Assembly (NCBI RefSeq): GCF_006345805.1
Contig: NC_042998.1
Span: 196,540,001-196,604,000 of the forward strand
Source of the DNA: Octopus sinensis
Taxonomy: Eukaryota
Length of the DNA: 64,000 nt
Direction: 5' to 3'
In this document: piece after piece, positions 38,528 through 47,981 of the stretch
How positions within the stretch are numbered: the stretch's first letter is position 1
Layout: the number at the start of each line of letters is the position of its first letter
The notes under the pieces: generated by a model
Told to the model about the DNA's origin: nothing
Seen by the model: only the letters and a program-made list of their open reading frames with translations
The model's database searches: none
Program-made: the position numbers and the translations under genes

Positions 38528-41473
38528 TTAAAAAAAATTAAACGTGACAGAAAGGAATGAAAATACAGAACTAGGAACAGAATTGAAACAAAAAAAAAAA
38601 GGATTCTGACTCTATTTTAGGAATGATGTTTAACCTGTAATCCAGACACTTATTTTATTGTATTTTGAAAAATATATTTATGAAAAAAAAATCATATCAC
38701 TTTTTCTAAGAAATAAGATTTTAGGACTGTGGTCTTAGTTATGGTGTTTTGTTTTTTTCTTGAGATTCTCTCCTCAACTCCTGGGGCTACAAATACAGAT
38801 TCTTTATGAACAAGATCTCAGTTAGAAGCTTATACTCTGAGTAAAGTTAAAGCCAACTCTATTAGCTTGAAGAAAAAAAAAATATGGAAAACAAAAAGAA
38901 AAAAAGGCAAAGCAAATATTGTAAATATTAAAACTATATTGTTCCTTTTTTTTTTATGATGTAGTATTTTTATATGTTATAGAAACAATAAATATATCTT
39001 GAAATATTGTATGTGTATGTATGTATACATACACACTCACACATATGTATATATATATATATGAATGTATTTTTTAATGAATAGAATAAAAATTATTTTC
39101 CTTGGAATATGAGTTTTTGATTTTGGTGGTATTTCATCTGTCTTTACATTCTGAGTTCAAATTCTGCCAAGGTCAACTTTGCCTTTCATCCTTTCAGGGG
39201 CCGATCTAATAAACTGACCCTTCCTAAAAATTTCGGGCCTTGTGCCTAGAGTAAAAAAGAATATGAGTCTTTGATTTCTGCTGTGTCTGGACACACACAC
39301 ACTCGACAAGCTTCTTTCAGTTTCCATCTGCCAAATCCACTAACAAGGCTTTGGTTGGCCTGGGGCTGTAGTAGAAGACATTTGCATAAGGTACCACACA
39401 GTGGGACTGAACCCAGAACCATGTGGTTGAAAAATTTATTTACTGATTTCTTGTTAAGTCTTTGATTTCTATTCTCTTCTCAGTCTTCAGGTATAAGAGA
39501 ACCAATCAACTTGGGGTTCCTTCCAAGATTCTTGGAAGGGGAACACCACTGACCCCTGAACAATGTAGAATTGATGGAATGTGCAGGTTTCTTTGTATCT
39601 TTTATTTATTTTTTTTTCATTACTTCTTTCAGTCATGAGACCACGGCCATGCTACGGCATGGCCTTGAATTTCAGTCAAATGAATTGCTCCCCAGTACTC
39701 AGTTCTTTCAAGCCTGGCACTTTTGCTAAATCGCTAAGTTACAGGGATGTAAACACCCCAACACTGGTTGTCAAACGGTGGTGGGACACACACACACTCA
39801 ACAAGCTTCTTTCAGTTTCCATCTACCAAATTCACTCTCAAGGCTTTGGTTGGCCTGGGGCTGTAGTAGAAGACATTCACATAAGGTACCACATAGTGGG
39901 ACTGAACCCAGAACCATGTGGTTGAAAAATTTATTTACTGATTTCTTGTTTTTCTTTACTTCTTACCATTTTTTTTCATTGTTATCTTCTTTTGTTGTGT
40001 TTCCTTTTCACTAAAATCCAGGTACTGGTTCTGAATTTTTCTTGTAATCATCATCATCGTCATTTAACATCCACTTTCCATGCTAGCATTGGTTGGATGA
40101 TTTTGACTGAGGGCTGGCAAACCAGATGGCTGCACCAGACTCCAATCTTGATCCGGCAGAGTTTCTACAGCTGGATGCCCTTCCTAACGCCAACCACTCT
40201 GAGAGTGTAGTGGGTGCTTTTGCATGCCACTGGCACGGGAGCCAGTCAGGGGGTACTGGCAACGACCTCGCTCGAATCTTTTACACATGCCACTGGCACA
40301 GGTGCCAGTTAAGCGATGCTGGTGACGGTCACGCTCAGATGGTGTTTTTTACGTGCCACCGGCACGGGGGCTGGATAGCCGCTCTGGCAACAATCGCGCT
40401 TGGATGGTGCTCTTAATACCCTACTAGCACAGGGCTCGAGTGCCAGTAAAGTGATGCTGGTAATGATCACACTCGAATGGTGCCTTTTAAGTGCCACTGG
40501 CACGGAAGCTGGTTGGCCGCTCTGTCAATGATCACACTCGTATCGTTGTAATATTCTCAAATATTAAATCCTAACATCTTTTTTTTTTTTGCCTGGCTTT
40601 GCAACCATGTAGTTTTGAGTTCAATCTCACTGTACAGCACTTTGATCAGAATTCTTCCAGTGTCACCTCAAACCAACCCATGCCTCGTGAGTAAATTTGG
40701 CAGACAGAAACATTGTGTATGTGTTTGTGTGTTTGTATCCCACCATTTCTTGATAACCAGTGTTGGTTTGTTTATGTCCCTGTAACTTATTGGCTAAAGA
40801 GACAAATAGAATAAGTACCAGGCGGCGAGCTGGCAGAAACATTAGCACACTGGGTGAAATAGTTAGCAGCATTTCGTCTGCCGCCACATTCTGAGTTCAA
40901 ATTCTGCCGAGGTCTACTTAGCCTTTCATCCTTTCGGGATCGATAAATTAAGTACCAGTTACGCACTGGGGTCGATGTAATCGACTTAATCCCTTTATCT
41001 GTCCTTGTTTGTCCCCTCTGTGTTTAGCCCCTTGTGGGTAGTAAAGAAATAAGAAACATTGTCTATGTGTTTGTTTGTACCCCACCATTGCTTGACAACC
41101 AGTGTCGGTTTGTTTATGTCCGGTAACTTATTGGCAAAAGAGAGACCAATAGAATAAGTACTAGGGATCGGTTTGCTCAATTAAACCCTTCAAGTGTGTA
41201 TGTGTGTGTGTGTGTGTGTTACATGATCTTTCATTAAGCAGTAGTAGTAGCAGTAGTAATAGTAGTAGCAGTAGTGTGAGTGGTGGGGAGGCAGGTGCAC
41301 TAAATAGTACATTACTGCATCCACCATTTATTGGTGATTCTCTATTCTTGGCAGACGAGACCATTGCACCGTTCAGGTGACACCCCTCCAACCGATGGGT
41401 CTGTTTTGGGCAGTGAGGGGTTTTTAATGAGGTCGGCGTGCAAAACCCTTCCCCAACCAGTTTTAGCTACATG

Positions 41474-41886
41474 TTAAGGGTCAGATTTAAACACTACATG
41501 TTCCAACAGTAAACTCGGTGACACAAACTGGGAAAATATGGCCTCTCCACAGACGTAACCAGCTGCTGCTGACGCCACAACTAATGGCAGGAAATGTTCG
41601 ATACGGGGATGAGCTTTGTGGAAGAATCGAAGAGATTCACACTCGAGCATTTGGTTTTTTCTTTCCGATGCTGATAATTTAGGGTTACAAAATACATTGC
41701 GCTCCCACACTTTAAATTCGTTTGCCCATTCAAATACACCATCAACAGTTTTCGCTTTTTCGCTTGAGTGAGTCATGAAACCAGATCCAACAATCAGGAT
41801 TCCGTCTTTGCGTAGTTCTGATAATGCCTCACCAATTTCTTGGTGTTCTTTGATGTCCAAAGTGTTCTTTAGAGAGATTTGGAATG
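41474..41886 (-). CDS. DODA: LigB-family extradiol dioxygenase (DODA-like), exon 2 (terminal)
   Basis: Acceptor ttatttcag|CA joins to give IPTFQISLKNTLDIKEHQEIGEALSELRKDGILIVGSGFMTH...AHPRIEHFLPL...SDP, ending in TAA. Spliced CDS 858 nt, 285 aa. Confidence 0.93.
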
Positions 41887-42056
41887 CTGAAATAAATTAC
41901 AATAAAATATTAAAAATCATGAAAGCTAATTTTAATATTTTAAGTTTCATTTTGTGATGTGTGTCAGTATGTATGTGTGTGAGCCTAGCAATTTGTTTTC
42001 ATATTCAATTCTGATATAATTGTAATTTACACCATCTGAAAGGTATTTATTGAGCA

Positions 42057-42360
42057 CTAGCAGTATCACCCGGCGTTGCTTGGGTTTGTAAGGGAAATAA
42101 CTATATAAGCATTTTTAGAGAGTTACTTCCCTTATATAAACCGAGCAAAAAATGCATTAAAAAAACGAAAAAATGATGGTAAACTTTTTTTCAATCATAG
42201 ACTCATCGTAGACACACGCTAATACCCAGAAGGGCTTGACATGAATCACAACTATAAGATATCCGCTTTTGGTTAAACTGCACCGCAAAATGTGGGAGTA
42301 GTTAGGAATCTAAATCGGAGGAGACAGACTCTCACACAACTTCAGTTTTATATATAAAGA
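42057..42360 (-). mobile_element. Helitron-type non-autonomous element
   Basis: On - it starts A|TC and ends CTAG|T, with subterminal cccaagcaacgccggg. Confidence 0.7.
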
Positions 42361-43420
42361 TTTCATTAAATAATACCCTTTTTTCAGAAAGTTATGAGGA
42401 AACAAAGTTCATTCGAGTGAATTTTCCGAAACCCCTTTCCCCACTCTCGGAAAAACATTTTTATGAGAAATTCCGATACAACCGGAATCTACACCAGCTG
42501 AAACATATTTCTAGAAAATTTTGTATTAAAGTTGTCGTATTTCGATAATTTCACCCCCTCCCACAATTTTAAATTTTGAACTCTTTCATCCATTTATTCC
42601 TTTAACTCTTTTACTTGTTTCAGTCATTTGACTGTGGCCATGCTGGAGCACCGTCGAGCGAATCAACCCCAGGACTTATTCTTTGTAAGCCTAATACTTA
42701 TTCTGTCGGTCTCTTTTGCACCAGCATCGGTTGTCAAACGATGTGGGGGGGGACAAACACAGGCACACATACATATATATATATATATATACGGCGGGCT
42801 TCTTTCAGTTTCCGTCTACCAAATCCACTCCCAAGGCCTTGGTCGGCCCGAGGCTATAGTAGAAGATACTTGCCCAAGGTGCCACGCAGTGGGACTGAAC
42901 CCGGAACCATGTGGTTGGTAAGCAAGCTACTTACTACACAGCCAATCCTACGCCTATAATAACTCTATTTATCCCTGTCCGTTTATTTATAAAATATATT
43001 TGTCAACTAAATGTGGCGGTCCTGTAGAAGACCGTGTTACTATTGTTTTTAGCCCCAGGAAGACATTCATATCTATTTCTTTATACACCTATCTAGATGC
43101 TTATTGAATTCAAAATTTTGAAAACCTGGTTCCTTGCATATTCGTAATCTCCGTCATCTAAAACATGACGGGAAAAAAATCTAGAAAAAGTTCAAAATTT
43201 TAGGGGAAGGGGTAAATTTTTTTTAATTTTTTTAGCATATTCGTAATCTCTGACATGCTAAACGTAAGAATCTGAAAAAAAATTTTTTTTAAATGCATTT
43301 TTCAAGGAGAGGTGCGAAACTGCATTAACCCTCCCATAAATGTGCTTGTTTCCATCTTATATAAAATATCTGTACAGGCATGAGCCATATTTTTCGAGAA
43401 GCGACCCGCTAAGATATGGA

Positions 43421-43663
43421 GTACTACTTGAGAACAGTGGTCCCGGTGCGCGCACTCGCGTAGTCACGCATCCGCGCTAGCTAGTCGTGACTAGTCGATC
43501 CTACAACGACTACCTAGCAAAGTAAATAAAACACAAAAACACAAAGTAAATAATTTTTTAAACACAGTAAATAACAAAAACACAAAGTAAGGATCGACTA
43601 GTCATGACTAGCTAGCGCGGATACGCGAGTGCGCGCACCGGGACCACTGTTCTGAAGTAGTAC
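43421..43663. mobile_element. GC-rich MITE with 74-82 bp TIRs and 8-9 bp TSD
   Basis: Arms at 43421-43502 and 43590-43663 (2 substitutions plus one 8-nt indel). aagatatgg on both flanks. Confidence 0.88.
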
Positions 43664-43856
43664 CAAGATATGGCTCATCATCAGTCGGGCCGCACTACTA
43701 AAAATATTCAACGTAATTCTTTGTGAGATACGCCATTCAGTGCCGTCCCGTGGCCCGCAGTTGGCCCATGGCGGTTCTCTACGTTGGTTACGTTTATAAA
43801 GAATTGCTTACGTGAAGCTCAAGAGATGCTACTGTCGTCACTTCCGATCAATTTAC

Positions 43857-44095
43857 TGGGAATGTCGACCTCCTCCGACCAGACTTTAAATTGAAGGTTA
43901 CCAACATCCCCGTGAGCCAACCGTCGACCATGTCCCTGCCCACACGGTACATCGTGTGTTTTTTGAATAACTTGGAGATACGGACAGCAGCAACTGGTGC
44001 TCTTCCTGCAGGTATGCTCTTGGGAAATCCATAAAGAAGTTTGGCTGCTATTTCTAACGTCTCGTCTATTTCAACGATAAACCAACAAGGAGCAC
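43857..44095 (-). pseudogene. Decayed, internally deleted copy of DODA exon 1 nested in the DODA intron
   Basis: Translates GAPCWFIVEIDETLEIAAKLL-YGFPKSIPAGRAPVAAVRISKLFKKH..., and in a shifted frame VWSEEVDIP followed by a|gtaaat. Compare the intact GGPSFFM..EAAKFL / YGFPKSM..PAKGAPAVAARVTELFKTH / VWPEADIP a|gtaagt. Confidence 0.8.
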
Positions 44096-44153
44096 CTGTA
44101 AGTTTTGGGTTGACGTATACGATGGCGGTTTATAGTAGCGACGTAAACAAAAA

Positions 44154-44550
44154 TCTCTCTCTATATAAAGCTGAAGTTGTCTGTGTATGGCAGGTTTGGT
44201 AGCCTTCAACTAACACTATCTCCTCCGAGACCCTGCGGCGCAAGTTGACCAAAATTGAGAGTATGATAGAAGAAGGCTTGCTCTTCCTTTCAAAGAAGAA
44301 AAAATTCAAATCGGACCATGTTAATACCAAAAATTATTTATATAAAAAAAGGTGCTTTTTTTTCTATGAAAACCCCCTTTTTTCTTTACGATTCTTTGAC
44401 TGCTGTGTTGTCATTTTTCGGTGTATTTCAACCAGAAAAATGTTCACTTAAAGAGAATAACAAGCTACATTATGCAAAATGTTTACTTTTCAAAAATTCC
44501 AATTCTAAAGGGTCGAAACAAACCCGAGCAACGCCTGGCAATACTGCTAG
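44154..44550 (+). mobile_element. Helitron-type non-autonomous element
   Basis: A|TCtctctctatataaagctgaagttg...aaacccgagcaacgcctggcaatactgCTAG|T. Termini are shared with the 42057-42360 element. Confidence 0.7.
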
Positions 44551-44580
44551 TGAATAAATAAAATTTGAGGGTTAACTTAC

Positions 44581-45025
44581 TTGGAATGTCGGCTTCTGGC
44601 CAGACCAAGATAAGGGGCACAAAAACGCCATGGTCTAAACCACGACCACGCACCTGCCTGCATGATATACCGTGTGTCTTGAATAATTCGGTGACACGGG
44701 CAGCCACAGCCGGAGCTCCTTTTGCAGGCCATTTCAGGTCATACATGCTCTTGGGAAATCCGTAATAATCAAAGAACAAGGAATGGTTTTGGTCGTCCAT
44801 GACGCATGGGACATTCTCTTCCCAGTGGGCGCTCACAACTAGGATCGCCTCTGGCCGTTTGTTCAGGTGAGTTCGTGTTAGATTTTGCAGGAATTTCGCT
44901 GCCTCTGAGTCCCGATCCATTCCACGCATATCTGGATATTCCTTGACATCCATGAAGAACGAAGGCCCACCTCCATGCGATAAGAAAATAACAGGCTGTA
45001 CACGATCGTTCGAGTGACCCGACAT
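44581..45025 (-). CDS. DODA: LigB-family extradiol ring-cleavage dioxygenase (4,5-DOPA dioxygenase/YgiD-like), exon 1
   Basis: Family motifs PVIFLSHGGGP, ILVVSAHWE, FDYYGFP, RGLDHGVFVPL and ADIP. Donor A|gtaagt, phase 1. Confidence 0.93.
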
Positions 45026-45492
45026 AATTCTATTTCAATATTTGCTGCGAGAGTCGAGCTGACAACTTCCAACTTGTCACTTCCACTCTTCCTCTCTTTC
45101 ACCCTCTCTATCTATTGATCGCTTTCTTTTCTCCATGTCTCACCTGTATTATTATTCCTTCTCTCTCTCACTCTCTTTCTTTAACCTTCACTCATTAATG
45201 GATCTTGTTAAATTTCTTCTCAAATTTTTACCAAATTTTTTTTTAAATTTCGACATTACTCTTTTACTCTTTTACTTGTTTCAGTCGTTTGACTGCGGCC
45301 ATTCTGGAGCACCACCTTTAATCGAGCAACTCGACCCCGAAACTTATTCTTTGTAAGCCCAGTACTTATCCTATCGGTCTCTTTTGCCGAACCGCTAAGT
45401 GACGGGGACATAAACACATCAGCATCGGTTGTCAAGCAATGCTAAGGGGACAAACACAGACACACAAACACACACACTTACACATATATATA

Positions 45493-45535
<43 letters not shown>

Positions 45536-46529
45536 ATATACATATATATACGACGGGCTTCTTTCAGTTTCGGTTTGGTCAGCCCAAGGTGCCACGCAGT
45601 GGGACTGAACCCAGAACTACTCCTGCACCTACATTGTGTAACCTTTTTTTATTGTACTTTATACGCACTTTTGACAAGTTGTGGTGCACCTGAGCACTGT
45701 ATACAATAATTTCATTATTATTATTACTATTATTATTTAATTTCTAGTGGAAGTGTGTGTGTGGAGGGGGGGGCGATGAATGCAAGTTTCGTCTCCAGCT
45801 TTCAAAACTACATTTAAAAAATTATTCTAGAGAAAATACTTGAAATTTAACAAGATCCATTGTTGTATCTGTTTCGTATATAATTGGTGCCAATTAAAAT
45901 TAACCCATAAGAACAGTAATGCACACTTAATAAATCAATTAAACTATGATGCCGAGAAATGACAACATTAATATACTGCAATAACTTTATCTACACTACA
46001 GGATGCAGCTAAAACAACCCATCAGTTTCGCCGATCTTGATAAACCTTTCAAGAAGAAACACAGAATACATCAATGCAAATAACGATAGTAACAAAAGCG
46101 GGGAAACACGATAAAACATTAAACTACATAAAGACACCATCGCTGCCTGTTTGAATTTTGTTAGTGTCACATCAATAGCCATGAGAAATAAGGTTTTTCT
46201 GTCTCATCTGTAATAACAATGTTGTTAAACATTTTTTTTTATTCGTTTCGATCATCCAGGATAGCCAGATTATTTATTTCTGTATATATCTCGTTACTAT
46301 TGGTTTCATTCTAATTGACGACGCTATAATCAATGATTACCTCTTCTTTTTTTTTTCCTTCAACTTTCATCTGCCCACTTCGAATTACACTGGTCAACAA
46401 AATACAACTTTCATTTTCTGGCATAAAATCTTAGAGTTGTATTAGACTTAATTTTAGCAGGATGATTCCAAAACTGATCTCAGATTTGCTTTATCACATA
46501 ACATTTTTGTGCCATCAGTATCTGCTTTT

Positions 46530-46785
46530 ATTTCTTCTTTATGCCTTTAGCCCTCCAATATGGAGTATCGGCCACTTATAGGTGAATTCCATGTCGCATA
46601 ATTTTTCGCTTCTGTACTTATACTCTGCCATGAATGTCCCCCTTTCTCTAGTTCCTTTTGTGTTGATCTACGCCACGAGTTCTTAGGCCTACTTTTCTTC
46701 CTATATCCATCCGGTTTCCACTCTAAAGCCCTTTTCGCTACATTTGGTGAGTCTTTTCTAATTGTGCTACCAATCCACTCTCAAA
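46530..46785 (-). mobile_element. RTE-clade LINE 3' fragment, a different subfamily from the 55.7-59.6 kb element
   Basis: EWIGSTIRKDSPNVAKRALEWKPDGYRKKSRPKNSWRRSTQKELEK. Confidence 0.75.
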
Positions 46786-47981
46786 GCCCAACCCCTCATC
46801 CTCGTCGTGAGAGATGGAACCAGGTAAAGCTGGCGCTGGTGAAGTTGAATGGGCTAATCACCCGTGCAATGGGTTTTCAAATTGATTACGAAAACACTGA
46901 TACTTTTATTTACCTGAAGTATATCAAAAGTTAACTTTACACCACTATTTGCAGGAATTTTGGATTGTCATGCTAATTCTGAATAATATGTTCAGGCGGA
47001 GTTTTGCTTTAAAATCCCATCTCTTCTTTTCAGGTGGGAACTAAACCACTGTGCTCTAGTTAGGGATACAACATCAAAAAGAAGGACGTGCTGTAACGAC
47101 CCCTGATATTTCTGTTAAATCTGTGGAGACTTCACTCCACAGCCTTAAAGGCACAAATATTAATAACTTTGTCGAGGTGTCTCTTGCTTACTTTAAAATA
47201 ACTCTCGGAGACTAGAATAAAACCTGTGTTGAAGCAATTTATCAAAGCTCTCGATCAAAGTGGAGACTGCTTCAGATGTAGATGTACATATTTCTTTACT
47301 ACCCACAAGGGGCTAAACTCAGAGAGGACAAACAAGGACAGACATAGGTATTAAGTTGATTATATCGACCCCAGTGCGTAATTGGTACTTAATTTATCGA
47401 CCCTGTAAGGATGAAAGGCAAAGTCGACTTCAGAACGTAACAGCAGATGAAATACGGCTACGCATTTCGCCCGGCGTGCTAACGATTCTGCCAGCTCGCC
47501 GCTTCAGATATATATGTACAGCCTTTCAAAGTCTCAGTAACGAGAAAAAGGCAGGAATATTTGATGGGCCTCAGATAAGAACACTCCTCAGGGATCCACA
47601 TTTTGTTACCACAATGAGTGCGGTGGAGGCTAGAGCTTGGAATGCCTTCTCTGATGTGGTGAAGAATTTCCTTGGAAACAGGAAAGCTGACAAGCATCAA
47701 GAGATTGTGCAGGAGCTGTTCTGGGGCTTGCAAGCAGCTGGATGTAGAATGAGCATTAAATTGCACTAATAAGATGGTCCCTTGTGTGAGTTTCCAGGGA
47801 ATGTGGGCGAGGTTAGTGAAGAACCAGGTAAACGCATTCATCACGATGTAAAAGTAATGGAAGAACACTGCCAAGGCTGATGGGGCTCAAATATGTCAGA
47901 TTACTGCTGGAGCTTGATGGGAGGCATTCCGGAAGCCGTGCACAAGAAATCATCAAATAAGAGGAAGTAATAAGATGATCG

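What the first reader, a model, noticed from the sequence alone, without database searches (positions are those of the whole stretch)
41474..45025. Intact spliced DOPA-4,5-dioxygenase-like gene in an animal genome
Seen: a 285-aa protein with all expected family motifs and His17, His67, His132, His188 and His246, interrupted by one canonical phase-1 intron, so it is not bacterial contamination. Established: LigB-family DODA of caryophyllalean plants and E. coli YgiD open the ring of L-DOPA to give betalamic acid, the betalain chromophore; vertebrates lack this family as far as I know; cephalopods handle much L-DOPA and dopamine for ink melanin. Inference: this may be an uncharacterised catechol ring-cleavage branch (pigment, ink chemistry or detoxification), possibly of horizontal origin. 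The residues after the GSG..H motif are HSSE, neither the HNL nor the HPSD type known from plants, so specificity cannot be predicted.
Basis: partly seen in the sequence, partly recalled or inferred. Interest (0 to 1): 0.8.

Follow-up and report, generated by a model that had tools for sequence, protein, structure and literature searches.

The report
Octopus DOPA-dioxygenase-like gene, already annotated
The window holds an intact two-exon octopus gene for an iron-dependent enzyme that opens catechol rings (DOPA-dioxygenase type); it is real and under selection, but it is already in RefSeq, is old and shared by molluscs, and its substrate is untested.

Summary
On the minus strand, exon 1 (45025..44581) and exon 2 (41886..41474) are joined across one GT-AG phase-1 intron. 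They encode a 285-aa LigB/DODA-type extradiol dioxygenase with all five catalytic histidines. The protein is 100% identical to RefSeq XP_029658119.1, "4,5-DOPA dioxygenase extradiol [Octopus sinensis]", so the gene and this exact model are already annotated.

- **Selection:** it is under purifying selection (dN/dS 0.13-0.25 against two other Octopus species).
- **Fold:** a model of the 96%-identical O. vulgaris orthologue is confident (pLDDT 95) and matches the beet and Mirabilis DOPA dioxygenases (TM 0.91) and E. coli YgiD (0.88).
- **Age:** orthologues occur in cephalopods, gastropods and bivalves. The tree follows mollusc classes, and the same phase-1 intron is present in all six mollusc genes examined (four Octopus-group and bivalve lineages).
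- **Origin:** it is neither contamination nor a recent bacterial transfer. In the trees, molluscs fall among sequences whose identifiable members are all microbial eukaryotes, apart from 84 named bacteria. AU tests do not settle the deep origin.
- **Substrate:** it remains open. The beet enzyme's three DOPA-positioning residues are not conserved.

No paper on the mollusc enzyme was found. A lepidopteran precedent exists.

The parts
44581..45025 (-). Coding exon 1 (ATG at 45025..45023; codons 1-148 plus the first base of codon 149). It carries Fe ligands His17 and His67, catalytic His132 and the HGGGP motif.
   Evidence: tblastn; identical structure in O. vulgaris and O. bimaculoides.
41887..44580 (-). 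Single phase-1 GT-AG intron, 2694 nt (GTAAGT ... TTTCAG).
   Evidence: The same codon and phase are interrupted in O. vulgaris, Pecten maximus, Solemya velum and Dreissena polymorpha, in O. bimaculoides, and in an unnamed sister clade.
41474..41886 (-). Coding exon 2 (last two bases of codon 149 to codon 285, plus the TAA stop at 41476..41474). It carries catalytic His188 (GSGFMTHSSE) and Fe ligand His246 (HPRIEHFLPL).
43850..44034 (-). Decayed partial copy of the 3' end of exon 1 together with its donor site, lying inside the intron (a pseudo-exon). It is 73% identical in nucleotides to 44765..44574, with indels of 15, 2, 2, 1 and 3 nt that break the frame.
   Evidence: Also present in O. vulgaris (one aligned block) and in O. 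bimaculoides (L013 3583-3762, 85% identity).
43421..43663 (.). Foldback (MITE-like) inverted repeat inside the intron. Two nested arm pairs of 49 and 46 nt are 92% and 89% complementary.
42601..42957 (+). Copy of a dispersed SINE-like host repeat inside the intron. Another copy starts at 45272, about 250 bp upstream of the ATG.
   Evidence: One search found 9 copies of the 42-nt core in the window against 0 expected. One search shows many matches of this segment across the O. vulgaris locus.

Best explanation
This is the Octopus sinensis gene for a cytosolic, single-subunit, non-haem Fe(II) class III extradiol dioxygenase of the DODA/YgiD type.

Shown directly:
- An intact 285-aa reading frame across one canonical intron.
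- A complete three-histidine metal site (His17, His67, His246) and the acid/base pair (His132, His188), aligned column for column with the residues shown by crystallography and mutagenesis in beet BvDOD.
- A confidently predicted DODA fold, modelled on the 96%-identical O. vulgaris orthologue.
- Purifying selection.
- Vertical inheritance within Mollusca, with a conserved intron.
- A duplication that gave two cephalopod paralogues. The copy in this window has so far been found only in Octopus.

Inferred mechanism:
- A catechol binds Fe(II) through its two hydroxyls.
- His132 deprotonates it, O2 binds, and the ring is opened next to the diol, with His188 acting as the acid.
- With L-DOPA this would give 4,5-seco-DOPA, which cyclises to betalamic acid, and/or 2,3-seco-DOPA, which cyclises to muscaflavin.

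Inferred, less certain:
- The physiological substrate is a free cytosolic catechol, such as L-DOPA, dopamine or their acid metabolites, or a dietary catechol. The role would then be catechol turnover rather than making a known pigment.

The deep origin is unresolved. The nearest identifiable relatives are microbial eukaryotes, not bacteria.
For: - Gene model and histidines.
- Pfam LigB at 1.9e-29.
- The best solved relatives by sequence are DOPA dioxygenases: 8in2 at 1e-45, 29ky and 9j2l; YgiD (2pw6) scores 4e-26.
- Residue mapping to BvDOD: H15/H53/H229 and H119/H175 align with H17/H67/H246 and H132/H188. These columns are invariant in 14 diverse sequences. Their roles come from PMC11926856.
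- 51 of 52 invariant or near-invariant family positions are kept.
- AlphaFold model of the 96%-identical orthologue: pLDDT 95.1, pTM 0.93. Foldseek target TM-scores are 0.91 (8in2), 0.91 (9j2l) and 0.88 (2pw6).
- dN/dS is 0.25 (dS 0.063) against O. vulgaris and 0.13 (dS 0.25) against O. bimaculoides.
- Molluscs are monophyletic at 100/99, with class-level structure. The phase-1 intron is shared.
- The identical RefSeq protein is named 4,5-DOPA dioxygenase extradiol.
- An animal enzyme of the LigB/DODA family (Bombyx BmDODA) has measured DOPA 4,5-dioxygenase activity, Km 1.06 mM (PMC11657626).
Against:
- The NCBIfam equivalog model for E. coli-type 4,5-DOPA dioxygenase scores 122 bits, below its 233-bit cutoff.
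- The three residues shown to position L-DOPA in BvDOD (Thr17, Asp254, Tyr260) align with Gly19, Val270 and Leu276. They also vary in the active Mirabilis and E. coli enzymes, so this weakens an L-DOPA assignment without excluding it.
- The octopus subfamily has an HGGGP motif plus an insertion of about 13 residues next to the first metal ligand. This is absent from the characterised plant and E. coli enzymes.
- No full-length transcript-like contig of this copy was found. The only other member of its 90% cluster is a 156-aa product on short Logan contigs that ends like exon 1 read through into the intron, which suggests genomic DNA. In contrast, the cluster of the cuttlefish-type paralogue holds many full-length products on 1.2-1.5-kb contigs.
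Confidence: 0.8

Rival explanations
1. The gene is bacterial contamination of the assembly, or a recent bacterium-to-octopus transfer.
For: The family is overwhelmingly bacterial in databases. Named bacteria (Myxococcota, Alpha- and Gammaproteobacteria, Acidobacteriota and others) reach 37-45% identity, about as much as distant molluscs do.
Against: - There is a canonical phase-1 spliceosomal intron with host repeats inside it.
- The locus is syntenic in O. vulgaris at 93-96% nucleotide identity, and the same two-exon gene is present in O. bimaculoides.
- The same intron occurs in bivalves.
- Exon GC is 42-50% (GC3 44%) against 40% for the window, which is not strongly foreign.
- All 84 named bacterial homologues other than YgiD fall in a separate clade. 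The separating branch has 99/85 support in the careful tree.
Confidence: 0.01
2. The gene entered the stem lineage of molluscs, or a slightly wider lophotrochozoan group, by ancient horizontal transfer from a microbial eukaryote. It has been inherited vertically since.
For: - Among named proteins, close relatives are found only in molluscs. No other annotated animal phylum appears in the best 120 hits of two searches.
- The nearest identified outgroups are chrysophytes (Chromulina, Mallomonas, Chlorochromonas), a testate amoeba, and contigs with eukaryotic neighbours.
- The mollusc clade is nested among them in the ML trees.
- Lepidoptera acquired a LigB gene horizontally (PMC12477841, PMC5704228).
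Against: - Absence from other animals was judged only from ranked hit lists, not from an exhaustive search.
- An unnamed sister clade with the identical intron may be another animal group, which would widen the distribution.
- The deep backbone is unresolved. The AU test does not reject all eukaryotes, plants included, as one clade (p 0.45). It also does not reject molluscs grouping with bacteria (p 0.23).
Confidence: 0.4
3. The gene is an ancestral eukaryotic gene inherited vertically. It was retained in molluscs and lost in most other animal lineages.
For: In the trees, named eukaryotes are separated from named bacteria by a single branch (99/85). A single eukaryote clade that includes plants is not rejected (p 0.45).
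Against: This needs many independent losses across Metazoa. Molluscs do not group with any opisthokont sequence in the sampled set. Plants branch far from the mollusc and protist clade.
Confidence: 0.35
4. The enzyme is a dedicated betalamic-acid or muscaflavin pigment synthase acting in octopus ink or skin colouration.
For: It is homologous to betalain DODAs. Cephalopods have abundant L-DOPA and dopamine (general knowledge). Insect and bacterial homologues make betalamic acid in vitro (PMC9097196, PMC11657626).
Against: - The gene is shared by molluscs that lack ink.
- The N-terminus shows no obvious hydrophobic signal-peptide-like stretch on inspection; no predictor was run.
- The plant betalain-type motif after His188 is absent, and the BvDOD DOPA-positioning residues are not kept.
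- No betalain-type pigment is reported from cephalopods in the searched literature.
Confidence: 0.07

Closest known systems
Plant 4,5-DOPA extradiol dioxygenases (Beta vulgaris BvDOD, PDB 8in2; Mirabilis jalapa DOD, PDB 9j2l)
   Same: These are the best matches by both sequence and structure (E 1e-45; TM 0.91; 28-34% identity). They share the three-histidine Fe site, the same two catalytic histidines, the same single-domain size, and the RGLDHG, PEADIP and GSG..H blocks.
   Different: Plants have HGTP at the first ligand, without the insertion of about 13 residues. They have HP(S/L)(N/D)..TP after the catalytic His where octopus has HSSEKAKT. BvDOD Thr17, Asp254 and Tyr260 are replaced by Gly, Val and Leu. 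Plants lie outside the mollusc, protist and bacterial 'HGGGP' group in every tree.
Escherichia coli YgiD (PDB 2pw6), the bacterial 4,5-DOPA dioxygenase
   Same: Same fold (TM 0.88) and the same five histidines. It is the archetype of the DODA-type branch of the LigB superfamily.
   Different: Identity is only about 27%. The octopus protein scores below the NCBIfam equivalog cutoff (122 against 233 bits). YgiD has HGSP and HNL motifs and sits on a long separate branch in the trees.
Lepidopteran LigB / Bombyx mori BmDODA1
   Same: It is an animal-encoded LigB/DODA gene of patchy distribution. The enzyme has measured DOPA 4,5-dioxygenase activity (PMC11657626; Wang, Sun and Zhang 2019, as cited in PMC11926856 and PMC9097196).
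   Different: It is reported as a transfer from a fungus into the lepidopteran ancestor (PMC12477841, PMC5704228), so it is an independent event.
HGGGP-type DODA-like proteins of chrysophytes, amoebozoans and Myxococcota/Proteobacteria
   Same: They share the HGGGP motif and the N-terminal insertion at 37-45% identity. The eukaryotic members are the nearest identified outgroups of the mollusc clade.
   Different: They are uncharacterised. The one protist genomic copy inspected (P0118 on L011) is a single uninterrupted ORF, whereas the mollusc gene has a conserved intron.
LigAB protocatechuate 4,5-dioxygenase, aminophenol dioxygenases and MEMO1 (wider superfamily)
   Same: They share the fold at lower similarity (TM 0.45-0.7).
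   Different: LigB-type enzymes use a two-His-one-Glu site and often a second subunit (PMC11926856). MEMO1, the member of this fold recovered among solved animal structures, is not a catechol dioxygenase. The octopus protein is clearly on the DODA branch.

Membership tests
LigB superfamily (class III extradiol dioxygenase, Pfam PF02900) | Significant match to the LigB catalytic-subunit profile over most of its length | tested here: met
   PF02900 at E 1.9e-29 and 103 bits against a 26.3-bit cutoff. Residues 13-259 cover profile positions 3-246 of 269.
LigB superfamily (class III extradiol dioxygenase, Pfam PF02900) | The characteristic fold | tested here: met
   AlphaFold2 model of the 96%-identical O. 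vulgaris orthologue: pLDDT 95.1. Foldseek probability is 1.00 to 8in2, 9j2l, 2pw6, aminophenol dioxygenases, DesB and LigAB. This rests on a predicted structure, not a solved one.
DODA/YgiD-type branch (4,5-DOPA extradiol dioxygenases) | A three-histidine Fe(II) site (BvDOD H15, H53, H229) instead of two His and one Glu | tested here: met
   His17, His67 and His246 align with these residues. The columns are invariant across 14 diverse sequences. Roles come from PMC11926856.
DODA/YgiD-type branch (4,5-DOPA extradiol dioxygenases) | The catalytic histidine pair (BvDOD H119 and H175) | tested here: met
   His132 (RGLDHG) and His188 (GSGFMTH) align with them.
DODA/YgiD-type branch (4,5-DOPA extradiol dioxygenases) | Equivalog-level similarity to E. 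coli 4,5-DOPA dioxygenase (NCBIfam NF007914) | tested here: not met
   122 bits against a curated cutoff of 233. The protein is a relative, not an equivalog by NCBI's criterion.
DODA/YgiD-type branch (4,5-DOPA extradiol dioxygenases) | Extradiol cleavage of L-DOPA to betalamic acid and/or muscaflavin | not testable with these tools
   This needs recombinant enzyme and an absorbance or LC-MS assay.
Betalain-type plant DODA (high-activity DODA of Caryophyllales) | The HP(S/A)(N/D)xTP motif after the catalytic His, and the L-DOPA-positioning residues Thr17, Asp254 and Tyr260 of BvDOD | tested here: not met
   Octopus has HSSEKAKT, and Gly19, Val270 and Leu276 at the aligned positions. In the trees, plants are a separate clade.
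Horizontally transferred gene in an animal | Nested inside a donor clade with strong support, and absent from sister animal lineages | tested here: inconclusive
   The careful tree separates molluscs plus the identified microbial eukaryotes from 32 named bacteria with 99/85 support, and no other named animal phylum appears in the hit lists. However, AU tests leave the deep placement open (p 0.45, 0.60 and 0.23), and the unnamed sister clade could be another animal group.

The most novel reading that the evidence does not exclude
Molluscs, octopus included, have a working extradiol branch of catecholamine/DOPA metabolism. It would either produce betalamic-acid or muscaflavin-type ring-opened products or control the supply of melanin and catecholamine precursors. 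The gene would have reached the mollusc stem lineage by an ancient transfer from a microbial eukaryote, making it a second and independent acquisition of a DODA-type enzyme by animals, after Lepidoptera.
Probability: 0.12. Interest if true: 0.7.

Novelty: already known. Interest (0 to 1): 0.3.

Why it matters
As a sequence feature it is ordinary. It is a correctly predicted gene that RefSeq already lists under the same name.

What remains open is biological. A DODA-type catechol ring-cleaving enzyme is conserved across molluscs for roughly half a billion years, and it is duplicated in cephalopods. It seems missing from most other animals, and no published function for it was found. Animals that use large amounts of L-DOPA and dopamine, for ink melanin, DOPA-rich adhesives or shell periostracum, would be a natural place for such an enzyme to matter. 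The gene is also a clean case for asking whether patchy animal genes come from ancient transfer or from differential loss.

These are reasonable follow-ups, not surprises.

Tried and rejected
- The 96%-identical O. vulgaris protein P0001 was used there and for the structure model.
- **Missing loci.** Genomic loci for the Haliotis and Pomacea orthologues were not on record. The O. vulgaris paralogue's gene range (138 kb) was too long to fetch, so no gastropod intron position was obtained.
- **Literature.** Searches for a mollusc or octopus DOPA dioxygenase found nothing relevant. The Bombyx paper itself is not held.
- **RNA scans.** Rfam and tRNA scans of 40000-47000 found nothing, so the SINE-like repeat could not be tied to a tRNA.
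- **Sister clade identity.** The unnamed sister clade could not be identified. Cluster look-ups gave no names. A profile search found only molluscs as named relatives. The metagenome contigs L005, L006 and L014 carry no informative neighbouring genes.
- **Deep phylogeny.** One of my constraint tests was trivially satisfied. In another, the constrained tree scored better than the free search. I therefore treat the sister relation between chrysophytes and molluscs (99/82) as unproven.
- **Substrate residues.** Using BvDOD's residues to predict specificity was rejected as a decisive test, because the active Mirabilis and E. coli enzymes also differ at those positions.
Full report
**1. What is in the sequence**

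The minus strand between 45025 and 41474 carries two open segments.
- Joining 45025..44581 to 41886..41474 gives an uninterrupted 858-nt coding sequence of 285 codons plus TAA.
- The donor is CCAA|GTAAGT and the acceptor is TTATTTCAG|CA.
- The intron is 2694 nt and splits codon 149 after its first base, so it is phase 1.
- His17, 67, 132, 188 and 246 are all present, and the motif after the GSG block reads THSSE.

**2. Identity of the gene**

The spliced protein is identical over all 285 residues to RefSeq XP_029658119.1, "4,5-DOPA dioxygenase extradiol [Octopus sinensis]".
- It is 96% identical to the O. vulgaris protein CAI9716913.1 and 92% identical to O. bimaculoides LOC106874817.
- The window aligns with the O. 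vulgaris chromosome OX597815.1 at 93-96% nucleotide identity across introns and intergenic DNA.
- The window is therefore Octopus sinensis or something indistinguishable from it, and the gene with this exact model is already public.

**3. Family and active site**

*Sequence matches*
- Pfam LigB (PF02900) matches at 1.9e-29.
- Among solved structures, the best sequence matches are the plant DOPA dioxygenases: 8in2 from Beta vulgaris at 1e-45, then 29ky and 9j2l. E. coli YgiD (2pw6) follows at 4e-26.

*Catalytic residues*
- The BvDOD paper assigns His15, His53 and His229 as Fe ligands. It shows by mutagenesis that His119 and His175 are essential (PMC11926856).
- In a 14-sequence alignment these five columns are invariant. 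They correspond to octopus His17, His67, His246, His132 and His188.
- Of 52 invariant or near-invariant positions in a 108-sequence family alignment, the window protein keeps 51.

*Fold*
- An AlphaFold2 model of the 96%-identical orthologue has pLDDT 95.1 and pTM 0.93.
- It superposes on 8in2 and 9j2l with target TM-score 0.91, and on YgiD with 0.88.
- Aminophenol dioxygenases, DesB, LigAB and MEMO1 follow at lower scores.

Membership of the DODA-type branch of the LigB superfamily is therefore well supported.

*Reservations*
- The NCBIfam equivalog for the E. coli enzyme is not reached (122 against 233 bits).
- BvDOD residues Thr17, Asp254 and Tyr260, which position L-DOPA, align with Gly19, Val270 and Leu276. 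These positions also vary in the active Mirabilis and E. coli enzymes.
- Molluscs, protists and many bacteria share an HGGGP motif and an insertion of about 13 residues after the first ligand. The plant (HGTP) and E. coli (HGSP) enzymes lack both.

Catechol extradiol cleavage is a safe inference. L-DOPA as the natural substrate is only a candidate.

**4. Is it functional?**

Nei-Gojobori estimates from my own script give the following:

| Comparison | dN/dS | dS |
|---|---|---|
| Window vs O. vulgaris | 0.25 | 0.063 |
| Window vs O. bimaculoides | 0.13 | 0.25 |

- The coding sequence differs from O. vulgaris at 2.6% of sites, against about 7% over the 6.1-kb aligned block that holds the gene, its intron and flanks. 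This indicates purifying selection.
- I found no direct expression evidence for this copy. The only non-genome member of its cluster is a 156-aa product on short contigs that ends like exon 1 read into the intron.
- The cluster of the cuttlefish-type paralogue and the Crassostrea orthologue cluster both hold many full-length products on 1.2-1.5-kb contigs.

**5. Age and inheritance**

*Distribution*
- Named orthologues at 44-53% identity occur in Solemya, Haliotis, Gigantopelta, Pomacea, Littorina, Batillaria, Dreissena, Mya, Pinctada, Argopecten, Pecten, Tegillarca, Mytilus, Saccostrea and Crassostrea.

*Tree*
- In a careful ML tree (LG+C20, 94 rows) molluscs form one clade at 100/99 support.
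- Cephalopods, gastropods and autobranch bivalves each form sub-clades. Solemya sits near the base.

*Intron*
- The intron lies after the first base of the codon that follows the D-[IV]-P motif.
- It is at exactly this place and phase in O. vulgaris, O. bimaculoides, Pecten maximus, Solemya velum and Dreissena polymorpha.
- The gene and its intron therefore predate the divergence of cephalopods and bivalves.

*Cephalopod duplication*
- A second lineage groups a cuttlefish-type sequence (P0003, whose cluster holds Acanthosepion pharaonis) with an O. vulgaris paralogue (P0010).
- That lineage is sister to the window gene and its Octopus orthologues.
- The duplication is therefore at least as old as coleoids.

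**6. Horizontal origin?**

Contamination and recent bacterial transfer are excluded by the intron, the synteny, the host repeats and the mollusc-wide distribution.

*Immediate sister clade*
- The sister of molluscs (100/97) is a group of six unnamed sequences from transcript-like and metagenome contigs.
- Genomic pieces of one member end exon 1 at ...EADVP G|GTTGGT (L005, L006). Exon 2 begins after ...CCAG| on L014. This is the same position and phase as the mollusc intron.
- This is a eukaryote, plausibly an animal. I could not name it.

*Next relatives*
- The next group out contains the chrysophytes Chromulina, Mallomonas and Chlorochromonas. It also contains a contig with sparse short ORFs.
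- Further relatives include the testate amoeba Pyxidicula and an MMETSP protist.
- Another is a contig whose neighbours are eukaryotic: ANKRD13_C and a split PP1 phosphatase.

*Bacteria*
- Eighty named bacterial homologues fetched from GTDB genomes are 36-45% identical. They are mainly Myxococcota, Alpha- and Gammaproteobacteria and Acidobacteriota.
- All of them fall in a separate clade (174-row tree).
- In a careful 120-row tree, the branch separating molluscs plus seven identified eukaryote rows from 32 named bacteria has 99/85 support.

*Limits of the deep backbone*
- The AU test does not reject all eukaryotes, plants included, as one clade (p 0.45).
- It does not reject molluscs grouped with bacteria apart from the protists (log-likelihood 20.5 lower, p 0.23).
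- In one test the constrained tree beat the free search.

*Conclusion on origin*
- The affinity is eukaryotic rather than bacterial.
- The choice between an ancient transfer from a microbial eukaryote into the mollusc stem and vertical descent with many losses is open.
- No named non-mollusc animal appeared among the best 120 hits of either database search. This favours a patchy distribution but is not an exhaustive test.

**7. Comparison with what is known**

- An animal-encoded LigB/DODA gene is not new. Lepidoptera carry one attributed to transfer from a fungus (PMC5704228; PMC12477841).
- The Bombyx enzyme is listed with DOPA 4,5-dioxygenase activity, Km 1.06 mM (PMC11657626, citing Wang, Sun and Zhang 2019).
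- I found no paper on the mollusc enzyme.
- The finding is therefore an already annotated member of a known family whose physiological role in molluscs has not been studied.
- Any connection with ink, skin pigments or detoxification is conjecture.
- On inspection the N-terminus shows no obvious hydrophobic signal-peptide-like stretch, although no predictor was run. Taken with the gene's presence in inkless molluscs, this argues against an ink-specific role.

**8. Other features of the locus**

- The intron contains a decayed copy of the last 190 nt or so of exon 1, with its donor site (44034..43850). It is 73% identical and carries frame-breaking indels. It is conserved in O. vulgaris and O. 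bimaculoides.
- The intron also contains a foldback inverted repeat (43421..43663).
- It holds one copy of a SINE-like repeat that occurs nine times in the window, always in the same orientation.

**9. Verdict**

- The novelty claim and the horizontal-transfer hint are only partly supported.
- Interest is modest.

Noticed in passing
window 43850-44034 (minus strand), inside the intron: A decayed duplicate of the 3' end of exon 1, including its splice donor (CCCAG|TAAATT). It is 73% identical in nucleotides to 44765..44574 and has indels of 15, 2, 2, 1 and 3 nt. It is conserved in O. vulgaris and O. bimaculoides, so the partial tandem duplication is older than these species. Whether it is ever spliced into transcripts is unknown.
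   Followed up: partly
window 43421-43663: A foldback (MITE-like) element in the intron. Its nested inverted arms of 49 and 46 nt are 92% and 89% complementary. It is also matched in the O. vulgaris intron.
   Followed up: partly
window 13935, 14402, 21548, 24994, 28217, 35451, 42611, 45272, 61142 (start positions of the 42-nt core): A dispersed SINE-like repeat (core TTACTTGTTTCAGTCATTTGACTG[CT]GGCCATGCTGGAGCACC) occurs nine times in 64 kb, against 0 expected. All nine copies are on the + strand. One lies in the intron and one about 250 bp upstream of the start codon. No tRNA or Rfam match was found in 40000-47000.
   Followed up: partly
window 41200-41300: A (GT)n microsatellite followed by an imperfect (AGT/AGC)n trinucleotide run, just downstream of the gene's stop codon.
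   Followed up: no
P0010 (O. vulgaris, another chromosome) and P0003 (cluster includes Acanthosepion pharaonis): Cephalopods have a second DODA-like paralogue at 59-64% identity. The O. vulgaris gene model for it spans 138 kb and ends in an unrelated C-terminus that lacks the last Fe-ligand region, so that model is probably wrong. The cluster of the cuttlefish-type copy holds many full-length products on 1.2-1.5-kb contigs.
   Followed up: partly
L005, L006, L014 (metagenome contigs ERZ27241800, JGI 3300006001); P0021, P0025, P0029, P0030, P0033, P0122: An unnamed eukaryotic clade is sister to all mollusc sequences. It has the same phase-1 intron and a GSGQSTHN motif. It appears in several environmental metagenomes and in SRA runs SRR33145351-58. 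The organism was not identified.
   Followed up: partly
L013 (O. bimaculoides CM046602.1), protein P0002: The O. bimaculoides orthologue lacks four residues (APAV) in the helix after the WPAKG motif, relative to O. sinensis and O. vulgaris. I did not check whether this is a real in-frame deletion or an assembly or gene-model effect.
   Followed up: no
L001 1-171 (O. vulgaris), about 10 kb upstream of the gene; corresponds to window around 55000, minus strand: In O. vulgaris the upstream neighbour on the same strand is a Cep57-like gene (PF14073). The equivalent region of the window was not annotated here.
   Followed up: no
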